From positions 682,001 to 746,000 of the forward strand of contig JBLDXI010000021.1 in NCBI GenBank assembly GCA_047495785.1: a stretch of DNA of 64,000 nt. Reading direction: 5' to 3'. The notes under the pieces are model-generated. The model saw only the letters and a list, made by a program, of their open reading frames with translations. It was not told the DNA's origin and searched no databases. The stretch is from Lepidodermella squamata (lineage: Eukaryota > Animalia > Gastrotricha). Of this stretch, positions 1,851-21,100 are shown piece by piece (positions within the stretch are counted from its first letter, which is position 1; each line of letters starts with the position of its first letter). The translations under genes were made by a program, and so were the position numbers.

Positions 1851-2190
1851 GAGTTATTTGGAACGATTGATTGAAATGAATAGGTCTGAAAAAATCGTTA
1901 ATTTTTCTTTCACGTCGCGGCACGGAGTGCAAATGTTTTTTATACATAATTTCAGTCAGGTGGATCATCTTCCCCATATTCACCTTTTCCATATGCACTT
2001 ATCTAAAATTGTCTCTTTCTACCTAGATAAGTTACCGATCATGGCCTTCATCTTTATACCTTCTCTTTGGTATGAAGTATTCGCAAGATATAATTAGTCG
2101 CTTAACTATATAAGTTTTTATATAGTTGGACCAGTGCCGAATTTCAATGTCTTCAAAATGTTCCTTGCTGGAAAGACGCACCATTTGCTA
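1850..2190 (+). repeat. Upstream copy of the target duplication: 1850-2046 = 6502-6698 and 2047-2190 = 7852-7995 (deleted, non-functional copy of the 5' part of the AK5-like gene)
   Basis: Direct comparison by eye finds both blocks identical to the downstream sequence. The junction is ...ATGGCC|TTCATCTTT... Confidence 0.92.
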
Positions 2191-6692: not shown

Positions 6693-8394
6693 ATGGCCAT
6701 CCAACTTGCAGCAACAAGTGGCGCTGTATCATCCCCAGCTGACAAGGAATCTTCCAAGAAATATCTGTTTGCTGCTGAAATCCCGCATCTATTTGAGGTA
6801 AATTCTTAATTGAAAAATAATTCACTTAGTTATTTGTCGAATTTAGTGTCTCATGAGCGGGTTAATTCATCACCAACCCGTCAATCATTTGTCATTTCTG
6901 CGTAATTGTTTGGCAGCCGTGAAGCAATCCGGGGGCGTTGACTCTTTGCGCTGGGATTCTTTTATCGAGACCAATCAAGCGGAGCAGAGTGTCGTCTTAC
7001 CTAGCTCCAATCATGGCAGTCGATTACCATCTGCTAAAGTGAAGAACCACGAACCCACCGCTAAAACATCCGCTGCGACCCAATCGGACTTGTCGCCGTT
7101 ATCTAAGCGTTTAGTTGATCCAGGAAGAAAATCTGATTTATCGCAGACAGCAGCTATCGTTTTGGTTTACGGTACAGTTCACCAATACACCACAGTATAC
7201 AACTTATTTCGCTCATGCTTTTAGTTGGCCCGATTTCAACAAAGGGAAGCTTTAAGCTGCCCGGAGTGCCCAATGATGCTGAGGTCATCGAAGCATTTAC
7301 ATCTGGATTTCATGACTTGGACGACATGGAGGATGAACAGCTTCGAGAGCAAATATTGTCCAAGCTTTATTCACACGCCGGCAATGCTCCTGTTGTCCTT
7401 GTAAACTACCCAAGAAATGCTAATCAATTGCAATGGCTTCTAAATCGTGTTGGCGGCATCTCGGCGGCAGCATTTGTAGATTACACAGAGGAAGTTTTCA
7501 AAAACAGACTTGCTTTATCCACCGAAAGAGCGCTCACGACTCCATCTGCTATCAGCAGCAAAATTGAATCATACAAACAAGCAACGCTGCCTGTCATTCA
7601 TTGGCTTGATAGGAACGGAAAGCTGACAGTTGTGAGTCCGATTTAGTTGAACTTTAGCTTCAATTACGCTGAATCACGTCTTAGGTTGACGGTAGAGGTG
7701 ATACTGAAATTCACGATCAGCTGGCGAAGTTCTTCGATGACCGATTGAAGTACCGCGCTCGTTTGACTTCTATGATGGGAAAAGCAGAGCAAAATCTGGC
7801 TATTGACATTACCCCTATCACAGATCCTTATCCCAAGTCAGCTGCGGTGAATTCATCTTTATACCTTCTCTTTGGTATGAAGTATTCGCAAGATATAATT
7901 AGTCGCTTAACTATATAAGTTTTTATATAGTTGGACCAGTGCCGAATTTCAATGTCTTCAAAATGTTCCTTGCTGGAAAGACGCACCATTTGCTACAGCC
8001 ACCTCATGATCTGAAGGAAATTACTAAAGTAGTGGCCTCAAATGACGGCCCGTCTGTTTGCTTGAATTTTCCATCGAACCGTGCCGAGTTCGACTGGTTC
8101 CTCAAAAATGTTGGCTTCAGCATTGCGGGTGTTATTGTCATCGATCAGTCTGAAATTACTGCTCGAACTCGCCTTGCATCAGCCCACCTCAATGCCACTG
8201 AAATAGAAGATTCCATTGGAAATTACAAGAAACACGTTATCCCCATAATTCACTGGTTCGATCGTGCGGGAAAAGTCAAATTGGTATTCTTGACATACAA
8301 GCTATCACCATGTTATAGCGTTGTTTTTTTTCAGGTTGATGGTGAAGCTGACGATTCAGTAGTTATGAAAAACGTTGTCACTCACATTAAATGA
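6693..8394 (+). CDS. AK5-like paralog: N-terminal dimerisation/docking (D/D) domain plus two degenerate adenylate-kinase-like domains (multi-exon)
   Basis: KKYLFAAEIPHLFE|CLMSGLIHHQPVNHLSFLRNCL...GGVDSLRWDSFI matches the AK5 N-terminus. The AK-like parts keep NYPR/NFPS and YKQATLPVIHWL but lack the GGPGSGKGT P-loop. GT-AG introns, e.g. 6798-6846. Confidence 0.75.
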
Positions 8395-8745: not shown

Positions 8746-11700
8746 ATGACAGCAACACATGACAGCGTCAAAGACTACCTATATTCTAAGGATGTACCGC
8801 GAATGTTCGAATGTCTACTCGGATCGTTGATGCATCACAAGCCCGAGAATCCTATAAGCTTCGTTCGAGATTGTCTTCTACAAATAAAAGCAAACGGCGG
8901 CCTTGACGCACTGAAATGGAACACATTTATCGACAGAGCACCTCCACCAGCGACTGCCGATCAAATAGCGACGCTCAAATCGAAATGGCGCCCACTGATG
9001 AGTCAACGACCTCTTCCAGCCATAGCACCGCCACCTCAGCCGGTTAAAGCCGTTCCCCGGCCGCTGATTTGCTTAATCGGCGCCGATCGAGCTCTTTTGG
9101 CTGGTGCATCGTCTCTTCTTATGAAGCAGTATGACTTTGTTTTCAGAAATATGGGACAAGAGCCGTTGGTGAATGACGTACGTTTTTGGAGGGTGAAACT
9201 TTCTTCAATAGAATAATCACTCTATTGGCAGATAACTTCGAGCACTGAAACCATCGGCAATTGGGTAAATCTAGTTAACAAACAAGGCAGCACCTGCTCA
9301 GGCTTTCTAGTTACCGGTTACCCTCCTACAAAATCTCATTTAGATGCATTTCTGCGAAAGGTAACGGTGGCTTAATCTGATGAAGTTGAATGGATAATAA
9401 AATCATTTTTTTTAGAAAATTATGGCCTACCATTTGCTTCTGATTATTCATTTAAAAACATCGGCCCCAGTGACTCCTTCCATTACAGCTTGCATTGAGC
9501 GAGCGCGATCGTCTTCCAAAGGCTTGAATGTCGTCGAGGTGAGTAATTATCACCATCCTGAGAGCCTTCATTATTTGTTTCGATTTTATTTTTACAGTTC
9601 GAGGTTGAATCTGCGGAGGATGGATGCAATGAGGCCATTGGCGCCATTGTCGAGAAGTACCACCTTCACCCCTCACCCAGCCGTTTGGCTAGGGCTGGTA
9701 CCGGTCTAACTTCTGCGGGTGGCGAGGGCGTTTTAGCTTTCAAAGGCGAGAACATGAAAGCCGAAGCGGCTAGGAAGCCTGATTTGAACCCAGCTGTGCC
9801 TCTCGTGATGCTTTACGTCGGGCCCGAATCGAAAGACTATCTAGCTCACATTTCAAAGCTTCCAAATATCCAGTGTTTTGCTCAGGAACCGGCCGATACC
9901 GATGAAAAAGCTCACCAGCAACTGTTAGCCTCGCTGATTATGGCTGGTAAAGATTCAGGTGTTGTATGCATAAATTTCCCGCGCAGTGAGCACCAGCTTA
10001 ATTGGCTGCTAACTCGCGTCGGCGGCCTGACAAGTGCCGCCCTTGTCGACTATACGGAAGAAGCGATGGAGGATCGACTACTCGCGGCTAAGGCAAATAC
10101 TGCTGCGATTCAGTACTACAAGGAACAAACAATTCCGACAATTCACTGGCTTGACAGAAATGGAAAGCTTAAGCTTATCGTAAGTAAATTATTTTTGAGA
10201 ATTTTCCTAATTTCAAAACTTAAATTTTAGTGCCAAATCGCGAAGCCTGACGATGAAGTTGATGCCTTCAAGCAAGTGGAAGAATTTATAATCTCAGAAG
10301 TATTTTATCAGGTATGTTTACACTACCCATGCCAAATTTTGCATAATTGATTGTGATTTTTGTTGATTTGTTTTTGCGTCTCGATTACCAATACTTCTAT
10401 AAGCATCGTTTTATACAGCGTAATAATCGCCCAGTTTTTATCCCGGTATTCATGTGACTTGCCCAGTGTTTGCCCGGTGGGATTCCGGTGTTGACGATTT
10501 ACGCAAACTACTACATACTGTTGTTTTATCGGATTTTTACAAGCCCAACTAGTGGCTTCTAAAATCATGTATTGACTAGGTAGTAATTTGCACTCGCATA
10601 GATCAGTTGCTTTAAGCACTTCATTTTAATTTTGGCCGTAGAACATATCCGCTTTAAAAATCGTCGGTGTGTAGGTAAAGGTATTGCATTATATGCGAAT
10701 GAAAAAAATAAAATTGACAGCCTGATGCTGCCATGCGCGTTTATCTATCATCGTTATAGTAGTAGGTAATACCTCGCCGCCTTAATGTTTTATATTAATA
10801 AAACCACTCGTTCTCGAGCCTTCCGCCGATGGTCTCCATTTCTTTGCATCTGAAGAAGAAGCCAGCATTTTTATACCATCAAGTACCTTGCTACGATGAT
10901 GCAGAGCAGCGGCGCGTCTTAAGCAGCAGCAGCGAGCCGAGTTTGCTCTTCGCTTTTTTTTTCCACTGACGTTGTTCGGCAATGTTCTGCACACGTGGCA
11001 TGTGTACTTTTCCATTTTTTTCATCTTACATTCTGCATCACCGGCCAGCCCCCGGCATACATCTACTCATCGACTCTAACAAATAATAATAATGGTAGCG
11101 CAAAAGAGAGATATAACATTTCTGAGGTGTTGGCGCTCATTAGACGGGGCCGCCTTAATCATTTTTTCTAGAATATCCGCTAAACCGCCCATTTTTTCAC
11201 GCATGTTTTTTTGCGACTGGTGGAGCGAAATGCTCGTTTTTTTGTGCGCATATCGCATCTTCCTTCGCTACAATTTTCTGGCCGAAATAAGTAACTGCTC
11301 GACTGGTTTTGTACATCTGCTCCGACTGCATCAGTTTTCTTATTAAACATATATCGTTAATTATTACCATTACATCTTCTAGACACACTTGCTGTTGTTG
11401 TTTTTCTACACAACATTTTGAAAAGTCTTGCAACTTTTCTTCATAAAGGTGAGTCGGTAATTTAATAAAATGCATATTTAATACTAAATTTCCGTTACAT
11501 TCATCGCCAACAGCTGGCGTGTCTGGCTGAATTCAGCCTATATCATTCTAGAATCAGGTGTTGAAATGCCTTATGCGTTTAATACCTATTATTATTTATA
11601 TATATATATAAGAAGCAATGTTTTGATAAGGATATTATTAGTTTGAAAATATATATACCCCATATCTCGCCGGTTTTTATGGCACAGGTTCTCCGATATC

Positions 11701-14700
11701 TTTATACGAACCCGCCGTAGTACATATAATTCAATCCAGATTTCATCGTTTGTTACGATGCTTGTATATATATACCCTGACTCTTCTAGCGTTGAAAAAA
11801 TGAGCTTTTGAATACGGCTACCTGTTAATTTTATCTCCTCGATAGCGACACTGCGTGTACCCGGAAAAAAAATGGGCAACAAATTAAACAAATTGGTAAG
11901 CGTTTTGACTAATTAGTACTACTGCCTAGGTTAGGCTACCGTGCGTTGGTTGCTCGTAATTCTAATTCAGCATTATTACAAGGCAAATTACGCGAATCCG
12001 AATAAGTGGAGAGATGCTGCGTGAGATTTGCTTGACTTGCATTTTTTCCGTGCTGTAATAGCAGCGGATGAAAACAAAGATTTTTGGCCGAGATATTCAG
12101 CTGCCGCTTGAGATGTATGCCTAGCTATAAGGCAGATTATGATAATAGTATAATAAGGCGGCTTGAGGACCGATGCCTCAATACGTCTGTCACACATATA
12201 CGTGCCGGCGTGTTGTGTGTTTGGGGCTCGATCTTGCGATATGCCTCGTTAGTAATTGCTGCGACGGACCTTTTATACCTACATAGTAGTCCTCGCCTCA
12301 CTCAACCATCGTTTTTCCTCATGCAAAAATCTAGGCTATGGTTTATACATACCTATCTACCTACCTGCATCTGCTGCTGCTGCTGCTGCTGAGCAATGAT
12401 TTCAGTAAATAATGTCTTGTTGCTGATATTATCAGCCGAGCGAGACTCGCTACATTGCTGCAACAAACAATAATAAATAAATCGGCGTCTTTCGTTATGG
12501 CCTGTTCTCTCGTTCTAAAATCACGTGTATTGTTATTATTTTTCGGACACTATAGCCCTCCTAACTGCTATATAATATAATTTGCATAAAAAGCTGTTAA
12601 ATTCATCGCCTGACGCGCGGGCTCGATTTTATACCTGCGCGTGTCACATAACGTCGCCGTTTATCACGCTGCAACGCGATTTATTCCTTATACGAGAAAG
12701 TCATCATCCATGCTTGGGTGAAAAAATAATCTAAGCGCGATTATGTTTAATAACTGCCTGCCTTGCTGCCCGCTGCGCCCGAAACGCCGCTCATCGGCCG
12801 TCGGCCCCGTCCTGCCCGATCAGCAGCAGTCGGGCATGGGCGACGGGCCGTCGAGTGGTTCAGCCTCTCGAAACTCCTCAAGCCGGGTTAGTTTCTATTC
12901 GATTTTTTTTCCTCGTAAATTTGTCATATCATATTTCCTCAGGCGCGAAGACACGTCTTTTTAGCATTATTTTTTGTGAAATGCTATCACCATTATTATA
13001 ACTGAGAAAGCGCAGCGTAAACTGTTAAATGAGATTAACTAGCTTAGCGAGAATGCGCTTAAAGTAATATTAATATTAAAATATATTTTTCAGGGCAAGA
13101 AGGCTCCATCCTCTGCTGCTGTTGCTCCTGCTCCTGCTGCTGAAACGAACGAAACAGAAAACATGTCGATCCGTAAGTTTCTCTTTATTTCTAAATTAAT
13201 TATAAAGGATAAACGGAAAAATCAATTAATAATATTAGGCGGTAGGATGAAGCGCTGAGAGCGGTTTGTGTACCATAAATATTTACCTTTTCATTTTGCT
13301 CTGACAAAGTGTAGTGGCGCGATACATTTTACGTTTTCATTGTTTCAGTTCCGCTATGTAGCGCGCATTATTCTATATTAGGTATATTACTTTCAACTGA
13401 GTCCAAGGTCCAATTTAGTTTTATTAGCCTGCACACCTGCTGAGCGACATATTTTTACACGCTTGACCGAGCATTATTTGTGTTGTTTATATTTCGAGCT
13501 GCGATAAGAAAAACCAAGCTACTCGAATTTTTTGTTGTTCTTGACTTATTGATTTTTCGCTCGCGTGTGATCAAAATAATAAAACTAAAAATTTATTTTA
13601 ATTTCCTGTTTGGACTAAATTTTGTTAGACTGCTGCATTTATTTGTTTTGAAACGACTAAATGCTGATTTCGCAACTAAAACGCCTGTTTCTTCAAACTT
13701 GGCGTGTTTTTTACGACAATTTTACCTGGTTACTAACATATTTTCTTCCTCGAAAATCCCTTATAGAGCCGCAAACCCCGGCGGCTGTGGTTGCTGCTGT
13801 GGAACCTGAGCCTGAGCCATCAGCGCCGGCTGAGACTAACGTCCACGTCCATGTTGAACAGCCAACACCGCCGCCTAGCCGCGAAACCTCACCGCAAGCC
13901 ATCGAAGAGCCGAAAAAAGCTGAGGAGAGCCCAGCTGCGGATGACTCAGCCGCAGTTGAAACCGTGGCAGCTGTCACGGTGGGGGCTGTGATTCTCGCGG
14001 CTTCTCTCGAGGCTGAAAAGCAGGAAAACGACGAAGTGCTCAATTCCGTAGAAGAATCTCATACTAATTCCAATTCAACGCCGGTTATTGTATTGCAAGA
14101 GCCTGTTGTCGTGGCTGAGACGGATAAAACGGTGACAGGCGACGTAGATCAGCCGAATCCTGAGTACTCAGCCGTGCTGGACGCGACTCAGGCCGAGGAA
14201 CAGGCTGCTGAACAGATTTTGCAAGAAGTTATTACGGATGCTCACGTCGAGGCTGCGTCGGCTGAGGAAGAAGCTGCTGAGATAATAGTCGACCAACTCG
14301 TCACCGAGGCTCATCAGGAGGAAGAAATTGCGGTTGTTGAGGAGGTCACGCAAGAGGAGGTTATCCAACCGCAAGTCACCGAGTCTGAAACTGGTCATAG
14401 CGACAATCCAAACCCGGAATATTCCGCGATATTAGATGCAAGCCCCGAGGAAGCGATGGCTGAAGTTGTACTGGAGCAAATCGAGTCGGAGGCGAAAGCT
14501 GAAATGGTGTCGAATATTGAAGAAATCGCCTCGACACCCGCGGCTGAAAATGCTCATGATGGCAGCCATTATCATGACACGCATGGTTTGTTCAACTTTA
14601 AATTTTAACCGACCCCTTTTTAACCATAATAATGACATTCGTTGCAATAATTTTGGGATCAGAAAGCTGAAAAATGATTGCTGAATCAGGCTAATTCATA

Positions 14701-17700
14701 TTTTTTTAATTTAAAATTTAAAATTAAAATAAAATAATAAAAAATAATGAAATTTAAAATTTAATTTGATTTTTTTCAAATTTTGTAATTTTTTCAATTA
14801 GAGAAATTCCGAGAAATAAATATATTTTTCTGATTTATATGTATGTCCGTTTTTTGGCTATTTTCTCAGTATATTGCGACGAATGCTTTCATAGCGGTCA
14901 TTTTCCCCACGTGAATGCCTTGGGCTTACTGGGCCAAAAACATTGTCCAGGCCTGCTCCGTTGCATTATCGTGAAAACAATAACAAAATAACACATTCTT
15001 TTTACTAGAGCATGCGAGTTATCTTACTTTATTTTGCCAAGTCTGATTCATCATTCACGGCGACATTCTTGCTATAGCCTGATTCAATTTGCGCGCGTAT
15101 TGATTTCTCTGACCGTAATTTGCGGCCCAGACTTTTTTTTATGAAACGGACAAAAGCTGTCGTAGTCATTTAAATTTTGTGACATGGTTTGCTTATTTTT
15201 TCTTGAAACTCTAGAAAAACTCAAGGATACCAAGGTCATCTTCGTCCTTGGTGGCCCTGGAAGTGGCAAGGGAACTCAATGCGCGAAGTTGGTCGAACGG
15301 TACGGTTTCGCCCATTTATCGACCGGCGATCTACTCCGAGCTGAGGTCGCCTCTGGCTCGCCTCGCGGCAAGAAACTCGAGGCAGCTATGGCTGCTGGCG
15401 AATTAGTCACCCTCGACACTGTTCTTGAACTTCTCCGAGATGCCATGCTTCACGCCGTAGATAAAGGCCCAGCCCCTGGCTTTTTGGTCGACGGATTCCC
15501 CCGTGAACTCGACCAGGCGTTGAGGTTCGAGAAGGAAATTCGCGCGCCGGACGCTGTCCTATTTTTCGACCTGAGCGAGGCAACCATGCGTGCCCGTTTG
15601 CTGAAGCGAGGCGAGACATCAGGCCGCGTCGATGACAACGAAGAAACCATCGTGAAGCGGTTCAAGACCTTCGAACAGCACAGCAAGCCTGTTGTTGAAC
15701 ACTACGGACCCTCTAAAAAGCTGCACAAGTTCGTCGCCGAAGGTTCGCCGGACGAAATTTTCAGCCAAGTCACCGCAATCGTCGACCCGTTGATGGGCCG
15801 GCAGGGTACGGAATAAACGTTTATTATATTGTTAACAAAACCCTCTGATACCCTGTGCTAAATATCTATAATAATAATAATGAATAATATATCAATTGTT
15901 ACTGACATTTGTTTTATTGACGAAAAGCTAGAGAATTTTATCGCTTGCGCATGATTTTGAAATAAAGAATGTTCAAGTTTTGGCGTGTCCATTGTTCTAT
16001 TTTTCATCCTCAGTAATAACCTCCCAGGCAATCCTACTACCTTCCAACGAATCTGCTGCAAAACTTCCGAAGAACTAATGACAGTGAAAAGCTTTGTTTT
16101 CACTAATCCAACGTAAAAAACACAAATTTTGAAGCAGTTTCGCATATTACAGGCGTGGATAAGCTGAAAAAGACCAAGGTGATTTTTGTTCTCGGTGGCC
16201 CTGGAAGCGGTAAAGGAACGCAATGTGCCAAGCTTGTCGAACGCTACAAATTTGCCCATTTATCAACCGGAGATCTGCTGCGGGCGGAGGTTGCTTCAGG
16301 ATCGCCTCGAGGCAAAAAGCTCGAGGCAGCTATGGCAGCCGGTGAACTAGTCACCCTGGATACGGTGCTCGAGCTCCTCCGAGACGCCATGCTGAATGCC
16401 GTGAATAAGGGCCCAGCGCCGGGTTTCCTCATCGACGGTTTCCCGCGTGAGTTGGATCAAGCTATTAGGTTCGAGAAGGAAATTCGCGCGCCTGATGCTG
16501 TCCTATTTTTCGACCTCAGCGAGTCCACTATGCGCGCGCGTCTCTTGAAGCGCGGCGAGACATCAGGCCGCGTCGATGACAACGAGGAGACTATCATCAA
16601 GCGATTCAAGACCTTCTCCCTCCACAGCCGCCCTGTTGCTGATCACTACGTGCCGTCGAAGAAGCTTCACAAATTCGCAGCTGAAGGCACACCTGATGAC
16701 ATTTTCAAAAGCGTCGCCGCTGTCATCGATCCTCTGATGGGAAAACAAAGTAAGATTTATGTCCTGATCCAGGTCGTTATGCTGCTCTTCATTAAAACGA
16801 ACCAGTATATCGATTTTCATTTCCGTCCTTTTATGCATGTGCCTGAAATACAAAAGCTGAGAAGCCGCTTTCACACATTTTTTTTATTTGCTATTTGACC
16901 GGCCTATTTGTCCCCGGCCAATGCGAACTCTGGCGTAGTATGTATATGGTTTCGGAGGGATAAAAATCGCGTTATCGCAAAATATTGCCGGCTATGCTCA
17001 TCGTTTCAACGCGTGATAAAATGAATAGCCATGTTTATGTACATATGCGATTGCGAAATATCGACAGCGCGAATACCCAAGCGCAGCGTATAGCTATAAA
17101 ATAATGCTAAAAAAATTGCCAGGCCAGACGCTGCCTAAGCGATGTATGTTTTATGTGGAGACTTCGCGTGTGTATAGAAAATCGAACTCGCAATTTTTTT
17201 AGCTCGCGCGCTCAGACTGCTTTTCGCCATTTTGCTTCGCGTAATGTCTTCATTCTTTTACAGCTCGATAATCATTATAAATTCTCTATAATATTACAGA
17301 TAGAATCAAGTATACAAAAATATACTTGCACATTATTTTATACGCGCTCACGCCCATGAATTCGCTTTAGCCGGTCAATATACTTATGGAATAAGAATTT
17401 GGAAAAACAATATAAGCAACCTCATTTCGCCCAAACTGCATTTGAGAAATCACTAATCTTATTAAAGCCGATTAACGATGACTTCAGGTAGATATATCAT
17501 TGCCAAGAATCAGGAAATTATGGTATTTTTAACTGAATTTCTGTTTTTCAGATGAAGAGAAGCTCAAGAGCACCAAGGTAATTTTCGTCCTTGGTGGCCC
17601 TGGCAGTGGCAAGGGAACTCAATGCGCGAAGTTGGTCGAACGCTACGGTTTCGCCCATTTATCGACCGGCGATCTACTCCGAGCTGAGGTCGCCTCTGGC

Positions 17701-18150
17701 TCGCCTCGCGGCAAGAAACTCGAGGCAGCTATGGCTGCTGGCGAATTAGTCACCCTCGACACAGTTCTGGAACTTCTACGCGACGCCATGCTCCATGCTT
17801 TGAATAAGGGCCCAGCGCCTGGATTCCTAGTCGACGGATTCCCCCGTGAGCTCGACCAGGCGTTGAGGTTCGAGAAGGAAATTCGCGCGCCGGACGCTGT
17901 CCTATTTTTCGACCTGAGCGAGGCAACCATGCGTGCCCGTTTGCTGAAGCGTGGCGAGACATCAGGCCGTGTCGATGACAACGAAGAAACTATCGTGAAG
18001 CGGTTCAAGACCTTCGAACAGCACAGTAAACCCGTTGTTGCGCACTACGGCCCCTCGAAGAAGCTGCACAAATTTGTGGCTGAAGGAAGCCCGGACGAGA
18101 TTTTCAAGAATGTCGCCGCCGTAGTCGACCCTCTTATGGGCAAAAAATAA
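8746..18150 (+). CDS. AK5: AK5-like multidomain adenylate kinase locus (longest inferred isoform: D/D, degenerate AK domains, linker exon, three catalytic AK domains)
   Basis: KDYLYSKDVPRMFECLLGSLMHHKPENPISFVRDCL...LKWNTFI (AK5 D/D). The last 5' exon ends CAG|GTATGT at 10311 (phase 0), compatible with exon 13094-13172, followed by phase-1 AK exons at 15215, 16153 and 17552. The connectivity is inferred from phase. Confidence 0.7.
11872..11895 (+). CDS. Candidate alternative first micro-exon MGNKLNKL (N-myristoylation-type start)
   Basis: aaaATGGGCAACAAATTAAACAAATTG|GTAAGC: strong donor, phase 0, compatible with exon 13094. Confidence 0.55.
12743..12886 (+). CDS. Candidate alternative first exon MFNNCLPCCPLRPKRR... 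(Cys cluster plus basic patch)
   Basis: 48 codons ending AGC CGG|GTTAGT, phase 0, compatible with exon 13094. Confidence 0.6.
13094..13172 (+). CDS. Shared linker exon GKKAPSSAAVAPAPAAETNETENMSI
   Basis: tttttcag acceptor and C|GTAAGT donor. 79 nt, phase 0 in and phase 1 out, matching the phase-1 AK exons. Confidence 0.7.
13661..14585 (+). CDS. Candidate alternative first exon: aromatic/hydrophobic N-terminus plus a long acidic region with repeated NPEY motifs and amphipathic helices
   Basis: 308 codons plus 1 nt ending CAT G|GTTTGT (phase 1), which gives ...HDTHEKLKDTK when joined to AK exon 15215. Confidence 0.65.
15215..15816 (+). CDS. Adenylate kinase catalytic exon 1 (AK1/AK5-type, short LID)
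   Basis: VIFVLGGPGSGKGTQC, HLSTGDLLR, DGFPR, RGETSGRVDD. Possible phase-1 donor after 15805, or read-through to TAA at 15816 overlapping AATAAA. Confidence 0.95.
16153..16749 (+). CDS. Adenylate kinase catalytic exon 2
   Basis: Same motifs. Acceptor ttacag|GC GTG GAT and donor CAA A|GTAAGA, both phase 1. Confidence 0.95.
17478..18150 (+). CDS. Adenylate kinase catalytic exon 3 (17552-18150), with its own candidate micro first exon 17478-17487 giving a stand-alone AK1-like enzyme (MTSDEEKLKSTK...)
   Basis: ATG ACT TCA G|GTAGAT...tttttcag|AT GAA GAG. All AK motifs are intact. TAA at 18150. Confidence 0.9.
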
Positions 18151-21100
18151 TTTGATGAAAGCTGCCTCTACGAAAAATCAACATCATCATCTGTTCATTC
18201 AACATCAGCACGGTGAATCGTGTAAATAAATTTTAATTACACACCTTCCTGCCAATGACCAGCCTCATAGAGAAGTCTTTAATCACGCTACATTTTACGC
18301 TATCTTTCGAAATCTGTGTGCACCTTTCTGTCACATCTTTTCGTATTAGCTCGCCCTTCATGTTATACCTAATCGCATGGCATACTGCTGCATTTGTTAT
18401 TATAACAATAATTCTTAGCTATAAGAATTAGTTGGAGAGTAGCGGATTCAAGTTGAATGCCTATCGCAAAAATGAGATAATCAACACGTGAGTTTGGTGC
18501 CTGGAGTGAGTATGGAAAACTTCAAAGAGCCCGTTTTTTGTTTTTCTATTCATTTTTACTTCAACTGATTCGCCTAGGCTGTTAGCGCGGAGATTTTTGT
18601 TACTCATTGTTTCCCTGTATGTGATCTTATTGTATAAAAATTATATTTATTTCATTCGTCTAATGACCGACCAAAGAATGAACATCGATGAATAACGAAA
18701 AACAACAATAAAAGAGCCAACAGTTTGCGACTTGCGACTTGTGTTTATACTTATCACGGCTTTTTAATGGGAATCTCATTCATTGAAATGAATATGCGAA
18801 AATGACCTGTTTATGAATTTCGAGAGGAAATAATTTTGCAAATGACCTCGATGGTGACTATTCATTAGGCCCCTTTCAAGTGACGGGGTTTGCTACTTGA
18901 AAATTGTGTTTCTATTTTCCGCAGCTGTCATCATGTATGTAGGCTCTGATTGACGTATCGCCTGTTGCGATGGCTTTTCGTTAACGATAAATCGACCGCT
19001 CGCCTGGGCGTGTTTGTTTACTCATTGTTTACTTTAATTTTTAAAAGGCGTGGTTGTTGCCTGCCGGTGGTGGGCATTGTTGTTGAATTTCTAGTGAATA
19101 TTCAATTGCAACAACCAGCGAATCGATTGTTGTGTTTCGCGCTTGTGGCCTTTTGGCGGCGCTGCGTGCGGCAGCGATGAGGCCATCGCGCACTCGAGAC
19201 ATTATTGCGCGCACACCTTTCCGTGCGCTGACCTCTTGCGGGCATATCGCAACAACAACAAAAAGCCCATCTTCCAACCTGAGCGCGTCGTAATTCTTCG
19301 CAACATGCCTCGAACACGAACGAGCTTTTGAAAAGCGAAACGGTCGCGACTTCCACGATTCCTTACCGCACGACACTCGAGTTTATCTGTGTCTCGAACC
19401 CAACAAAAGACCTCGTCGTGCGTACATATTTATCAACTCAGGCGAGTGACATTTTACAGCGCTGATGAATCTTTCAGAAAAAAGCGCGTAGTACACTTTC
19501 GCCACGGTGCAATATCCTGGCTTGTTTTTGCGGGTTTGTTTGTTGTTTGCGCGGGGGGCGACTAGTAGCAACAGCAGGCGGCGCTAGCTAGGTACCTCTA
19601 CCATGTGTTATTACAACGCGTCACACGATGCGTGTAATAAATAACAAGAGACACCTGAAAATCCGTGTTTTTGTTTATGCGCGCCCTTTTGCGCGTTAAT
19701 TACGCTGTACTATATGTGATTTAGCCACTCTTTATCACAACAAATCTACTCGGCTAAATATAGCCCGCAGCCAAGTTGCTTAGTTGATGCTGATGATTAT
19801 AGCATTTGTTGTACCTACGAGTTGATGCACCAAAACGTAACACACACCGCGCAGGTTTTTCCACGACAAATTACCAACGATAATAGCCTTGTCAGTTGCG
19901 CCCTCTTGCGGCCGGTTATAATCCGCAACCGCGCGGCTCGCGATGCAAAACGGCGGCACGTCGCCCATATTCACCGCAAACATCATGGCCCAAGCTGCAT
20001 AGACCAGCCACCATGGGCTCTAACGGATCCGAGAAGCCCGCCCGCCGTGTGTATGTTTGCCCACTCGGCTAACATGATCAACAACGTTATTAATTTATAA
20101 ATATCGCCCACTTCGCGACTGTATAATAGGAAACCCTTCATCTACCACTCTTTCGCTTTGCTTTTCACAATGCCGTATCGTAGCTTTTGGCATCGGAAAA
20201 ATTACGCTACCGATCATACAATGCTATATTTATCCGGCTTATTTTTCAGATTTTCCACCGCAAGCGATAGTTTACGCCATATTCAATAATGAATAAATTG
20301 TTTATCGTCGGATACTCGACACCTTTGAGGAAGTTTGGCACCCTTTTTCTCCGCGTCTCTTTCACAGTTAGAAAGTGAATAGAAGTTTTCACAGGAATTT
20401 AGCCTATTGTTTGTAACATCGCGCGCGAGCTCATTGTTCGGCTTAGTAATCGGCGTTCTGTTCAATGAAAAAAGCGCGCAGCCACTTCCGTCGCGTAGAT
20501 GTCGCCTGTTGATATATGCGCCATTTAGAAGAAACGTGGCTGCGGATGGCATCAAGAGTGCCGATTTTAATTCTTCAGCAGCAACAACATAATTTTATAA
20601 CACTTGAGGATGCGAATTTGTTTTGACAACAATACTGCGATTAATTAAATAGTAGTGATTTTTCACCCGTTTTGCCGCGGCTTTAAGGTCAAACGCTGCC
20701 GCTGCGTGAACGTGCCCCGACGACCGCTGTGGGCTTGAAAACGTGCCGAAAGCACCTAGATATGTATATATGAGCGCCGTCGTCGAACGGCTGTCATCAC
20801 AAACTTAGATAGCTGGCTGCCCACCGCTAAAATGCGACTACATTCAGAAATGCCGCGCGCTAATTTCGAGTTAAGTATCGCCTATGTATTGTCAAGCGGC
20901 GGCGCGCGCGTATCTAGACTAGAATTCACACCTTGACTGTTACACGCGTTATTTTCACAACACCGACGATGACAACGCCCAATAAATCTTCATTTCATAC
21001 GCTTATCAAAGCGATGAACTCAATTCGAGACATTTCAACTTCAGCATTCAGTCGGCCCTAAAACTTACAGCTGCATTTATTCGAATTTTCAGCTTCCATT

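What the first reader, a model, noticed from the sequence alone, without database searches (positions are those of the whole stretch)
8746..18150. Modular adenylate kinase locus: five phase-compatible alternative N-termini on shared catalytic exons
Seen in sequence: three upstream units end in phase-0 donors (D/D unit at 10311, MGNKLNKL at 11895, MFNNCLPCCP... at 12886). All three fit the linker exon 13094-13172, which exits in phase 1. Two more ATG-initiated exons end in phase-1 donors (13661-14585 and 17478-17487). All three AK exons begin in phase 1. Established: an MG start with basic residues indicates N-myristoylation (as in mouse AK1beta), N-terminal Cys clusters indicate palmitoylation, and the AK5 N-terminus is an RIIa-like D/D domain. 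Inference: one gene acts as an addressing system that sends the same phosphotransfer enzyme to scaffolds, to two lipid-anchored sites, to a membrane-anchored site and to the cytosol through alternative promoters.
Basis: partly seen in the sequence, partly recalled or inferred. Interest (0 to 1): 0.8.

Follow-up and report, generated by a model that had tools for sequence, protein, structure and literature searches.

The report
Adenylate kinase gene with alternative anchor exons
One energy-shuttling enzyme gene (AK1-type adenylate kinase) of a small invertebrate really is spliced behind different short start exons with lipid-anchor-like sequences and an optional acidic insert, extending the known mammalian AK1/AK1beta design, but its proposed link to the neighbouring docking-domain gene is unproven.

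Summary
Contigs of two RNA-type runs confirm four of the six predicted junctions: 11895>13094, 12886>13094, 13172>15215 and 14585>15215. The "membrane-anchor first exon" is therefore mainly an optional internal 819-nt acidic cassette (13767-14585) behind the linker. Its own ATG at 13661 has only conservation support, and its N-terminus is not hydrophobic enough for a membrane helix.

A syntenic contig from a relative (AK body 80% identical) keeps phase-compatible counterparts of every module, but with one AK body. Here the body is triplicated, and all three copies are under purifying selection.

The D/D unit is an AK5-family protein with two AK-like domains that have lost their P-loops. A paralogue lies just upstream. 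The D/D unit has no reads in either RNA run, so 10311>13094 is untested. Both species nevertheless replace the paralogue's stop codon with a consensus donor at that point, so I put cis-joining at about 35%.

AK_B has no start or stop of its own and ends in a strong donor. I predict it is an internal exon spliced to AK_C.

Verdict: observation confirmed, interpretation partly supported. It is a new variant of the known AK1/AK1beta principle.

The parts
6847..8394 (+). Upstream paralogue of the D/D unit (D/D plus two degenerate AK-like domains). It ends in its own stop codon.
   Evidence: tblastn of D/D exons against the window; the terminal exon reads ...VVTHIK*.
8746..10311 (+). D/D unit: an AK5-like gene of five phase-0 exons (449 codons). 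It has an R1D2-type docking/dimerisation domain and two AK-like domains without P-loops. It ends in CAG|GTATGT with no stop.
   Evidence: phmmer matches to AK5 N-termini. Pfam ADK is silent. hhalign against an AK profile gives 94.5% probability. Depth is 0 at its last exon in RNA runs X1 and X3.
11872..11895 (+). Coding part of first exon E1a (MGNKLNKL), a candidate N-myristoylation start. The transcript's 5' boundary lies about 11632-11726.
   Evidence: Junction 11895>13094 in X1 (depth 93.6) and X3. X3 contig 17 links E1a, the linker and the cassette.
12743..12886 (+). Coding part of first exon E1b (MFNNCLPCCPLRPKRR...): a Cys cluster plus a basic patch, a candidate S-palmitoylation start.
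   Evidence: Junction 12886>13094 in X1 (depth 19.3). An orthologous exon is in L001 at 7336-7416.
13094..13172 (+). Shared linker exon: phase 0 in, phase 1 out.
   Evidence: It accepts from 11895 and 12886 and donates to 13767 and 15215.
13661..13766 (+). ATG-started 35-codon extension in front of the cassette, a possible further start. It is also the 3' end of the intron when the linker is used.
   Evidence: The ORF and its ATG are conserved in L001 at 7970-8074 (tblastn E 6e-5; alignment). RNA depth there is at intron level. Hydropathy is 0.33, below the transmembrane range.
13767..14585 (+). Optional 819-nt acidic cassette exon (phase 1 in and out). It carries a conserved hydrophobic stretch, NPxY motifs and AKAP-like amphipathic helices.
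   Evidence: Junctions 13172>13767 and 14585>15215 in X1 and X3, and the skipping junction 13172>15215 in X1. Conserved in L001. Motif scan.
15215..15817 (+). AK_A: an AK1-type body exon with a stop codon. It is the terminal exon for the linker and cassette forms. AATAAA lies at 15961.
   Evidence: Pfam ADK E 1e-45. Junctions and contigs run through the stop into the 3'UTR. Poly(A) signal scan.
16153..16749 (+). AK_B: an AK body, phase 1 in and out, with no start of its own. A donor (AAA|GTAAGA) stands in place of the stop. Predicted to be an internal exon.
   Evidence: dS about 1.2-1.3 and dN/dS about 0.06 against AK_A and AK_C. Transcribed in X1. Its splice partners were not seen.
17478..17487 (+). 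Mini-exon ATGACTTCAG, the candidate start of the plain (cytosolic-type) form of AK_C.
   Evidence: Phase 1 and a 64-nt GT..AG intron. The relative has a counterpart, ATGTCTG|GTCAGC, 70 nt upstream of its AK acceptor. No reads were laid here.
17552..18150 (+). AK_C: an AK body with a stop codon. AATAAA lies at 18225.
   Evidence: Pfam ADK. 95% amino-acid identity to AK_A, with stretches of about 100-120 nt free of mismatches.

Best explanation
The locus holds one complex AK1-type adenylate kinase gene.

Shown by RNA: at least two alternative ATG-first exons, MGNKLNKL and MFNNCLPCC...RPKRR, are spliced to a common 79-nt linker exon. From the linker, splicing goes either straight to the first AK body (AK_A) or through an optional 273-codon acidic cassette and then to AK_A. 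That gives up to four N-terminal make-ups on one catalytic body.

Inferred: the two start exons act as lipid-anchor addresses. One would carry N-myristate plus a basic patch. The other would carry S-palmitate on a Cys cluster plus a basic patch. The cassette adds a docking region with AKAP-like amphipathic helices and NPxY motifs. The same phosphotransfer enzyme would then be placed at different membranes or scaffolds.

Supported by conservation only: two more starts, the ATG at 13661 in front of the cassette and the mini-exon 17478-17487 in front of AK_C, the latter giving the plain cytosolic-type form.

The AK body was triplicated in this lineage. AK_A serves the anchored forms, AK_C keeps the plain start, and AK_B lost both start and stop and is predicted to be an internal exon.

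The upstream D/D unit is most probably a separate gene. It encodes an AK5-like protein whose two AK domains are catalytically dead, and it has a paralogue directly upstream.
For: -: junctions 11895>13094 (X1 and X3), 12886>13094 (X1), 13172>13767 (X1 and X3), 13172>15215 (X1) and 14585>15215 (X1 and X3). All are GT..AG and none appears in the DNA-like run X2. One X3 contig links E1a, the linker and the cassette. Another runs from the cassette into AK_A.
- X1 carries SMART cDNA oligos, so it is a cDNA run.
- the syntenic contig L001 keeps MGN-, Cys/basic-, linker-, ATG-cassette-, internal-acceptor- and mini-exon counterparts in the same phases, in front of a single AK exon.
- apart from the Cys/basic exon, the surrounding non-coding DNA cannot be aligned between the two species, so these matches are meaningful.
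- all three bodies match Pfam ADK; dN/dS is 0.06-0.08.
- the D/D domain matches AK5 N-termini, and AK5 is listed in the D/D superfamily (PMC8339350).
- the D/D unit's AK-like domains lack P-loops but are still homologous to AK.
- the paralogues end in stop codons.
- the D/D last exon has depth 0 while the AK gene is well covered.
Against: - No lipid modification, localisation or enzyme activity was tested.
- In the relative, the MGN start is followed by Asp at position 6, which the usual N-myristoylation pattern disfavours.
- RNA depth just upstream of 13767 is at intron level, so the ATG-13661 form is minor or absent in these samples.
- AK_C and most of AK_B lay outside the single read-laying run allowed, so their splice partners are unknown.
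- In both species the D/D unit lacks the paralogue's stop and has a consensus donor exactly there. That argues against it being a simple separate gene.
- The evidence is from contigs, not reads, so rare isoforms can be missed.
Confidence: 0.6

Rival explanations
1. One reading: the D/D unit is a fifth alternative 5' module of the same gene, spliced 10311>13094. The product would be D/D, two dead AK domains, the linker, the optional cassette and then an active AK.
For: The donor is CAG|GTATGT at 10311 and the phase fits the linker. The relative has CAG|GCAAGT, a GC-donor consensus, at the homologous codon, and its linker acceptor is also phase 0. The paralogues in both species have a stop right at this point, whereas the D/D units do not. 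No other conserved coding block lies between the D/D end and the linker apart from the Cys/basic exon, which is ATG-started. Relatives with three or four AK domains behind a D/D domain exist.
Against: The D/D last exon has zero depth in both RNA-type runs although the linker and AK exons are covered. Read-through reaches a stop after 12 codons here and 4 in the relative, so a separate gene is viable. The D/D unit already has the complete AK5 layout. The relative's donor would have to be of the rare GC class.
Confidence: 0.35
2. There are three independent tandem AK genes, and the upstream small ORFs are unrelated or untranscribed.
For: There are three complete AK bodies in tandem. AK_A and AK_C each have their own stop codon and poly(A) signal.
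Against: RNA junctions join E1a and E1b, the linker and the cassette to AK_A. AK_A and AK_B have no usable ATG of their own in frame.
Confidence: 0.03
3. The alternative 5' ends do not arise from separate promoters. Instead, spliced-leader trans-splicing at unpaired acceptors just upstream of each ATG exon acts on longer, possibly operon-like, primary transcripts.
For: Other agents' notes report leader trans-splicing and TAG acceptors before start codons in this genome (unchecked by me). Candidate [TA]AG acceptors lie 7-35 nt upstream of the ATGs at 8746, 11872, 12743, 13661 and 17478. The gap from the paralogue's stop to the D/D ATG is only about 350 nt.
Against: Such AG sites are expected by chance at these distances. 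The relative lacks one upstream of two of its ATG exons. No leader sequence appeared among the listed loose ends. Coverage upstream of E1a starts at about 11632-11726, which fits a local start.
Confidence: 0.3
4. AK_B is an internal exon spliced 16749>17552 to AK_C, so the locus also makes a tandem two-domain AK.
For: AK_B is phase 1 in and out. A strong donor (AAA|GTAAGA) sits exactly where AK_A and AK_C have their C-terminal ends. It has no stop for 49 codons, and the first poly(A) signal (ATTAAA at 16791) comes before that stop. It is under strong purifying selection. Two-domain AKs are common among the database matches.
Against: No reads were laid on 16232-18150. The 49-codon read-through ORF is longer than expected by chance (about p 0.04 by my rough estimate), so it may be a real hydrophobic C-terminal tail. 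AK_B's upstream partner was not among the listed junctions.
Confidence: 0.45

Closest known systems
Mammalian AK1 / AK1beta: one gene whose alternative 5' exon adds an N-myristoylated, membrane-targeting N-terminus
   Same: The enzyme type is the same (short AK1-type, 59-65% identical to proteins annotated as adenylate kinase or AK isoenzyme 1). The principle is the same: an alternative start exon puts a Gly2 lipid-anchor-like N-terminus on an otherwise cytosolic AK (PMC2680645).
   Different: Here there are at least two anchor-type first exons with different chemistry, a shared linker exon, an optional 273-codon acidic cassette and a triplicated AK body. Nothing has been shown at the protein level.
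Plasmodium falciparum AK2: an AK with N-myristoylation, a palmitoylatable Cys and a basic stretch
   Same: It also combines an AK with N-terminal acylation and basic motifs used for membrane targeting (PMC4409355, PMC4912828).
   Different: In PfAK2 the motifs sit on one fixed N-terminus. Here the Gly2/basic and Cys/basic motifs lie on separate, mutually exclusive first exons.
AK5: D/D domain (R1D2 clade) followed by two active AK domains
   Same: The D/D unit's first 70 residues match AK5 N-termini from lamprey, fish, a viper, a nemertean and flatworms. They carry the two loop prolines (KPENP) named as the R1D2 hallmark in PMC8339350. The layout, D/D plus two AK-like domains, is the same.
   Different: Both AK-like domains have lost the P-loop lysine motif and escape Pfam ADK, so this is a pseudoenzyme version. 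It is duplicated in tandem and lies directly upstream of the AK1-type gene.
AKAP amphipathic helices that bind RIIa-type D/D domains (for example RSP3 in radial spokes)
   Same: The cassette has conserved helices such as AEIIVDQLVTEA that fit the RII-binding pattern as I recall it. D/D-domain genes lie next door. D/D-AKAP pairs that do not involve PKA are known (PMC3494852, PMC8339350).
   Different: No binding was tested. In the window the motif count is not significant against shuffles (p 0.09); in the relative it is (p 0.0015). An AK that carries AKAP-like helices itself did not turn up in my paper searches.

Membership tests
AK1-type (short) adenylate kinase, Pfam ADK PF00406 | Match to the ADK profile above its cut-off | tested here: met
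   AK_A, AK_B and AK_C score 151-156 bits against a cut-off of 26.8.
AK1-type (short) adenylate kinase, Pfam ADK PF00406 | Intact P-loop GGPGSGKGTQ and the conserved Arg/Asp motifs (GFPRE, RxDDN) | tested here: met
   These columns are invariant in the alignment with ten AK1-type proteins.
AK1-type (short) adenylate kinase, Pfam ADK PF00406 | Enzyme activity | not testable with these tools
   Only purifying selection (dN/dS 0.06-0.08) speaks for function.
AK1beta-like alternative-first-exon myristoylated isoform | A separate ATG-first exon spliced onto the common AK body | tested here: met
   Junctions 11895>13094 and 13172>15215 or 13172>13767.
AK1beta-like alternative-first-exon myristoylated isoform | Gly2 in an N-myristoylation context, using the PROSITE-type pattern G-{EDRKHPFYW}-x(2)-[STAGCN]-{P} recalled from memory | tested here: inconclusive
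   The window's GNKLNK fits. The relative's exon MGNIL followed by the linker's DK puts Asp at the [STAGCN] position.
AK1beta-like alternative-first-exon myristoylated isoform | Actual myristoylation and membrane localisation | not testable with these tools
   Needs metabolic labelling or tagged G2A mutants.
N-terminal S-palmitoylation signal (Cys cluster next to a basic patch, GAP-43 type) | Cysteines within the first ~10 residues followed by a basic cluster, conserved in a relative | tested here: met
   Window: Cys 5, 8 and 9 plus RPKRR. L001: Cys 6 and 11 plus RPTKRR. tblastx E 0.009 within DNA that otherwise cannot be aligned. The modification itself is untested.
AK5 / R1D2 docking-dimerisation domain family | N-terminal D/D domain homologous to that of AK5 | tested here: met
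   phmmer gives 106 matches. Residues 5-70 align to the N-termini of proteins named adenylate kinase isoenzyme 5. All ten proteins scanned carry ADK domains behind it.
AK5 / R1D2 docking-dimerisation domain family | Two prolines flanking the loop between helices I and II (PMC8339350) | tested here: met
   ...MHHKPENPISF... in exon 1.
AK5 / R1D2 docking-dimerisation domain family | Two catalytically competent AK domains | tested here: not met
   The P-loop positions read GADRALLAG and VGPESKDY. Pfam ADK finds nothing at E<=1. Homology to AK shows only at profile level (hhalign 94.5%).
AKAP-type amphipathic helix | RII-binding helix pattern (recalled from memory), present more often than composition predicts and conserved | tested here: inconclusive
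   Window: 4 overlapping hits in two helices, p 0.09. L001: 5 hits in three helices, p 0.0015. The helix EEEAAEII.DQ is invariant between the species.
   The maximum is 0.33 in the window and 1.07 in L001. The only stretch near 2.0 (AVETVAAVTVGAVILAASL) lies inside the cassette, so it is shared by the linker-joined forms.

The most novel reading that the evidence does not exclude
The locus may encode both halves of an AK-anchoring pair. The long AK1 isoform carries AKAP-like helices in its cassette. The two neighbouring genes encode dimeric D/D-domain AK5-like pseudoenzymes that could dock on those helices in trans, or, if 10311>13094 is used, be fused in cis. This would be a PKA-independent D/D-AKAP system that positions adenine-nucleotide phosphotransfer, perhaps in cilia or sperm.
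Probability: 0.2. Interest if true: 0.75.

Novelty: new variant of a known kind. Interest (0 to 1): 0.5.

Why it matters
How cells place phosphotransfer enzymes next to ATP consumers is a standing question. The best-known case is the single myristoylated AK1beta variant of mammals. This locus shows, with RNA support, a richer version in an invertebrate: two different lipid-anchor-type start exons, a common linker and an optional docking cassette on one AK body. Further starts and a triplicated body are also present. It offers a compact natural system for testing whether N-terminal addresses alone re-localise AK. It would also allow a test of whether AK5-type D/D pseudoenzymes pair with AKAP-like helices on another AK.

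Tried and rejected
1. The word search with the cassette ORF found nothing, not even the relative's ORF. I suspect low-complexity acidic words swamped the candidate list.
2. The metagenome contig scan with the cassette alignment gave 600 pattern matches, none confirmed.
3. The AlphaFold model of the second dead AK domain had mean pLDDT 49. That is too poor for a fold search, so I ran none.
4. phmmer of D/D exon 4 against PDB sequences gave no AK match. Only the profile-profile comparison showed the homology.
5. The SMART oligo at 11719 is not a clean transcription start, because 7 nt of genome there match the oligo's 3' part (possible strand invasion). I rely only on where coverage begins.
6. 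The loose ends at 12296, 12780 and 16162 look like fold-back chimeras (the 12780 match is imperfect), not leaders.
7. I rejected 'three independent AK genes' because of the junctions.
8. I rejected 'transmembrane N-terminus' because of the hydropathy.
9. The species itself is absent from the protein collection: the best AK match is 80% identical. No spliced products could therefore be recovered that way.
Full report
**Observation.**
- The D/D unit runs from ATG 8746 through five phase-0 exons (8746-9177, 9232-9360, 9416-9538, 9598-10179, 10231-10311). It ends CAG|GTATGT.
- The MGNKLNKL exon (ATG 11872) ends at 11895 in phase 0. The MFNNCLPCCP exon (ATG 12743) ends at 12886 in phase 0.
- The linker 13094-13172 enters in phase 0 and leaves in phase 1.
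- The ORF from ATG 13661 ends at 14585 in phase 1. The 10-nt mini-exon 17478-17487 also ends in phase 1.
- Three AK bodies start at 15215, 16153 and 17552, each needing one nucleotide from the upstream exon. All three match Pfam ADK at E about 1e-45.

**RNA evidence.** One run search and one read-laying run were allowed. I laid three runs on 10232-16231.
- X1 carries SMART cDNA oligos and covers exons far more than introns. X3 covers exons only. X2 is evenly covered, like DNA.
- These junctions, all GT..AG and none present in X2, were seen:
  - 11895>13094 (X1, X3)
  - 12886>13094 (X1)
  - 13172>15215 (X1)
  - 14585>15215 (X1, X3)
- One X3 contig carries the MGNK exon, the linker and the start of the cassette. 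Another runs from the cassette into AK_A.
- Four of the six predicted junctions are therefore real.
- Depth just upstream of 13767 is at intron level, so transcripts starting at ATG 13661 are at best minor in these samples.
- Contigs run through the AK_A stop into its 3'UTR, so AK_A is a terminal exon.
- The D/D last exon has depth 0 in X1 and X3, so 10311>13094 was not tested.
- AK_C lay outside the stretch. AK_B's first 79 nt are covered in X1, but no junction into 16153 was listed.

**Comparison with a relative.** The closest AK in the protein collection is 80% identical and comes from a metagenome scaffold. Its 11.3-kb locus L001 is syntenic. In order it holds:
- a paralogue gene and then a D/D unit;
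- an exon MGNIL|GT;
- an exon MSFFNCLVPPCLRPTKRR...|GT;
- a phase-0-in, phase-1-out linker-like exon;
- an ATG-started ORF whose first 35 codons match those after ATG 13661 (E 6e-5);
- a positionally conserved internal phase-1 acceptor, and an acidic cassette ending G|GT;
- a mini-exon ATGTCTG|GT 70 nt upstream of the AK acceptor;
- a single AK exon with a stop codon.

Outside these blocks the DNA between the D/D end and the linker cannot be aligned between the two species, so the matches reflect constraint. This supports the ATG-13661 start and the AK_C mini-exon as real. It also shows that in the ancestor all starts served one AK body.

**The three AK bodies.**
- AK_A and AK_C differ at dS 0.36 and share stretches of about 100-120 nt without mismatches, which suggests gene conversion. 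AK_B differs from both at dS about 1.2-1.3. dN/dS is 0.06-0.08 throughout, so all three are maintained.
- The remnant of the mini-exon is unusable upstream of AK_A. Upstream of AK_B it is out of phase.
- AK_B also has no stop. At the homologous point it has AAA|GTAAGA in phase 1. Read-through runs 49 codons, and the first poly(A) signal comes before that stop.
- I therefore predict that AK_B is an internal exon spliced to 17552, giving a tandem AK. A hydrophobic C-terminal tail is the alternative. Neither was tested.

**The D/D unit.**
- phmmer of exon 1 against 1.84 billion representatives gave 106 matches. Residues 5-70 align to the N-termini of proteins named adenylate kinase isoenzyme 5, from lamprey, fish, a viper, a nemertean and flatworms. 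Every protein scanned carries ADK domains behind the D/D domain.
- AK5 is listed in the D/D superfamily, R1D2 clade, whose hallmark is two loop prolines (PMC8339350). The window has KPENP.
- The unit's two AK-like domains have no P-loop, escape Pfam ADK and match an AK profile only by hhalign (94.5%, E 8e-8). It is an AK5-like pseudoenzyme, complete in layout.
- A paralogue with the same layout lies at 6847-8394.
- Against cis-joining: there is no RNA coverage, and stops come soon after read-through.
- For cis-joining: the paralogues of both species end in a stop exactly after the last helix. The D/D units of both species instead have a consensus donor there (GTATGT here, GCAAGT in the relative). 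The only conserved phase-compatible acceptor downstream is the linker.
- I put the junction at about 35%.

**How it probably works.**
- Shown: alternative first exons, a shared linker, an optional cassette and one AK body.
- Inferred from the sequence motifs: MGNKLNKL followed by the linker's GKK is a Gly2-plus-basic start of the kind that is N-myristoylated, as in AK1beta (PMC2680645). MFNNCLPCC...RPKRR is a Cys-cluster-plus-basic start of the kind that is palmitoylated. Such motifs target PfAK2 (PMC4409355).
- The cassette's invariant helix (EEEAAEII.DQ..EA) and its repeats fit the AKAP pattern. The count is significant in the relative (p 0.0015) but not in the window (p 0.09).
- The N-terminus from ATG 13661 is not a transmembrane helix by hydropathy (0.33). 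The only hydrophobic stretch near 2.0 lies inside the cassette.
- Whether the 5' ends come from promoters or from leader trans-splicing is open. Other agents' notes report trans-splicing in this genome and suggest a rotifer. I did not verify either point.

**Limits.**
- All the RNA evidence is from contigs, which show presence but not absence or abundance.
- Several searches led nowhere.

**Verdict.** This is a new variant of the AK1/AK1beta alternative-N-terminus principle. It leaves an open and more interesting possibility: that the neighbouring D/D pseudoenzymes and the AKAP-like cassette belong together.

Noticed in passing
window 6847-8394: A tandem paralogue of the D/D unit with the same layout (D/D plus two P-loop-less AK-like domains). 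It ends in its own stop about 350 nt before the D/D unit's ATG. The same pair exists in the relative (L001 2005-3449 and 3658-5262).
   Followed up: partly
window 2134-2190 and 7939-7995: A 57-nt stretch that translates identically (19 of 19 residues) occurs both at the start of the ORF listed from 7939 in the paralogue region and about 5.8 kb upstream. It may be a repeat or a duplicated fragment.
   Followed up: no
window 13099 and 13550: In run X1 an intronic fragment is flanked by the SMART oligo in inverted orientation on both sides. At 11719 the oligo abuts 7 nt of genome that match its own 3' end. Both look like library artefacts (strand invasion or chimeras) rather than transcript ends.
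   Followed up: partly
window 13730-13737; L001 about 8033-8040: A TACTAAC branch-point consensus lies inside the conserved TWLLT codons of the ATG-13661 extension in both species. Part of that conservation could therefore serve splicing of the internal acceptor rather than coding.
   Followed up: partly
window 16750-16898: Read-through of the AK_B donor gives a 49-codon stop-free extension with a 13-residue hydrophobic run (IYVLIQVVMLLFI). It may be a C-terminal tail if the donor is not used.
   Followed up: partly
window 15229-15783 against 17572-18126: AK_A and AK_C share patches of about 100-120 nt without mismatches between more diverged parts, which suggests gene conversion. DNA run X2 shows about double depth there, consistent with collapsed contigs.
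   Followed up: partly
protein P0142 (Macrostomum lignano, 556 aa): A flatworm AK5-like protein has a D/D domain, one AK domain with an altered P-loop context, a second with Lys replaced by Arg (GGPGSGRR), and a C-terminal IQ-like motif. Partial decay of AK5 catalytic motifs may be wider than this lineage.
   Followed up: no
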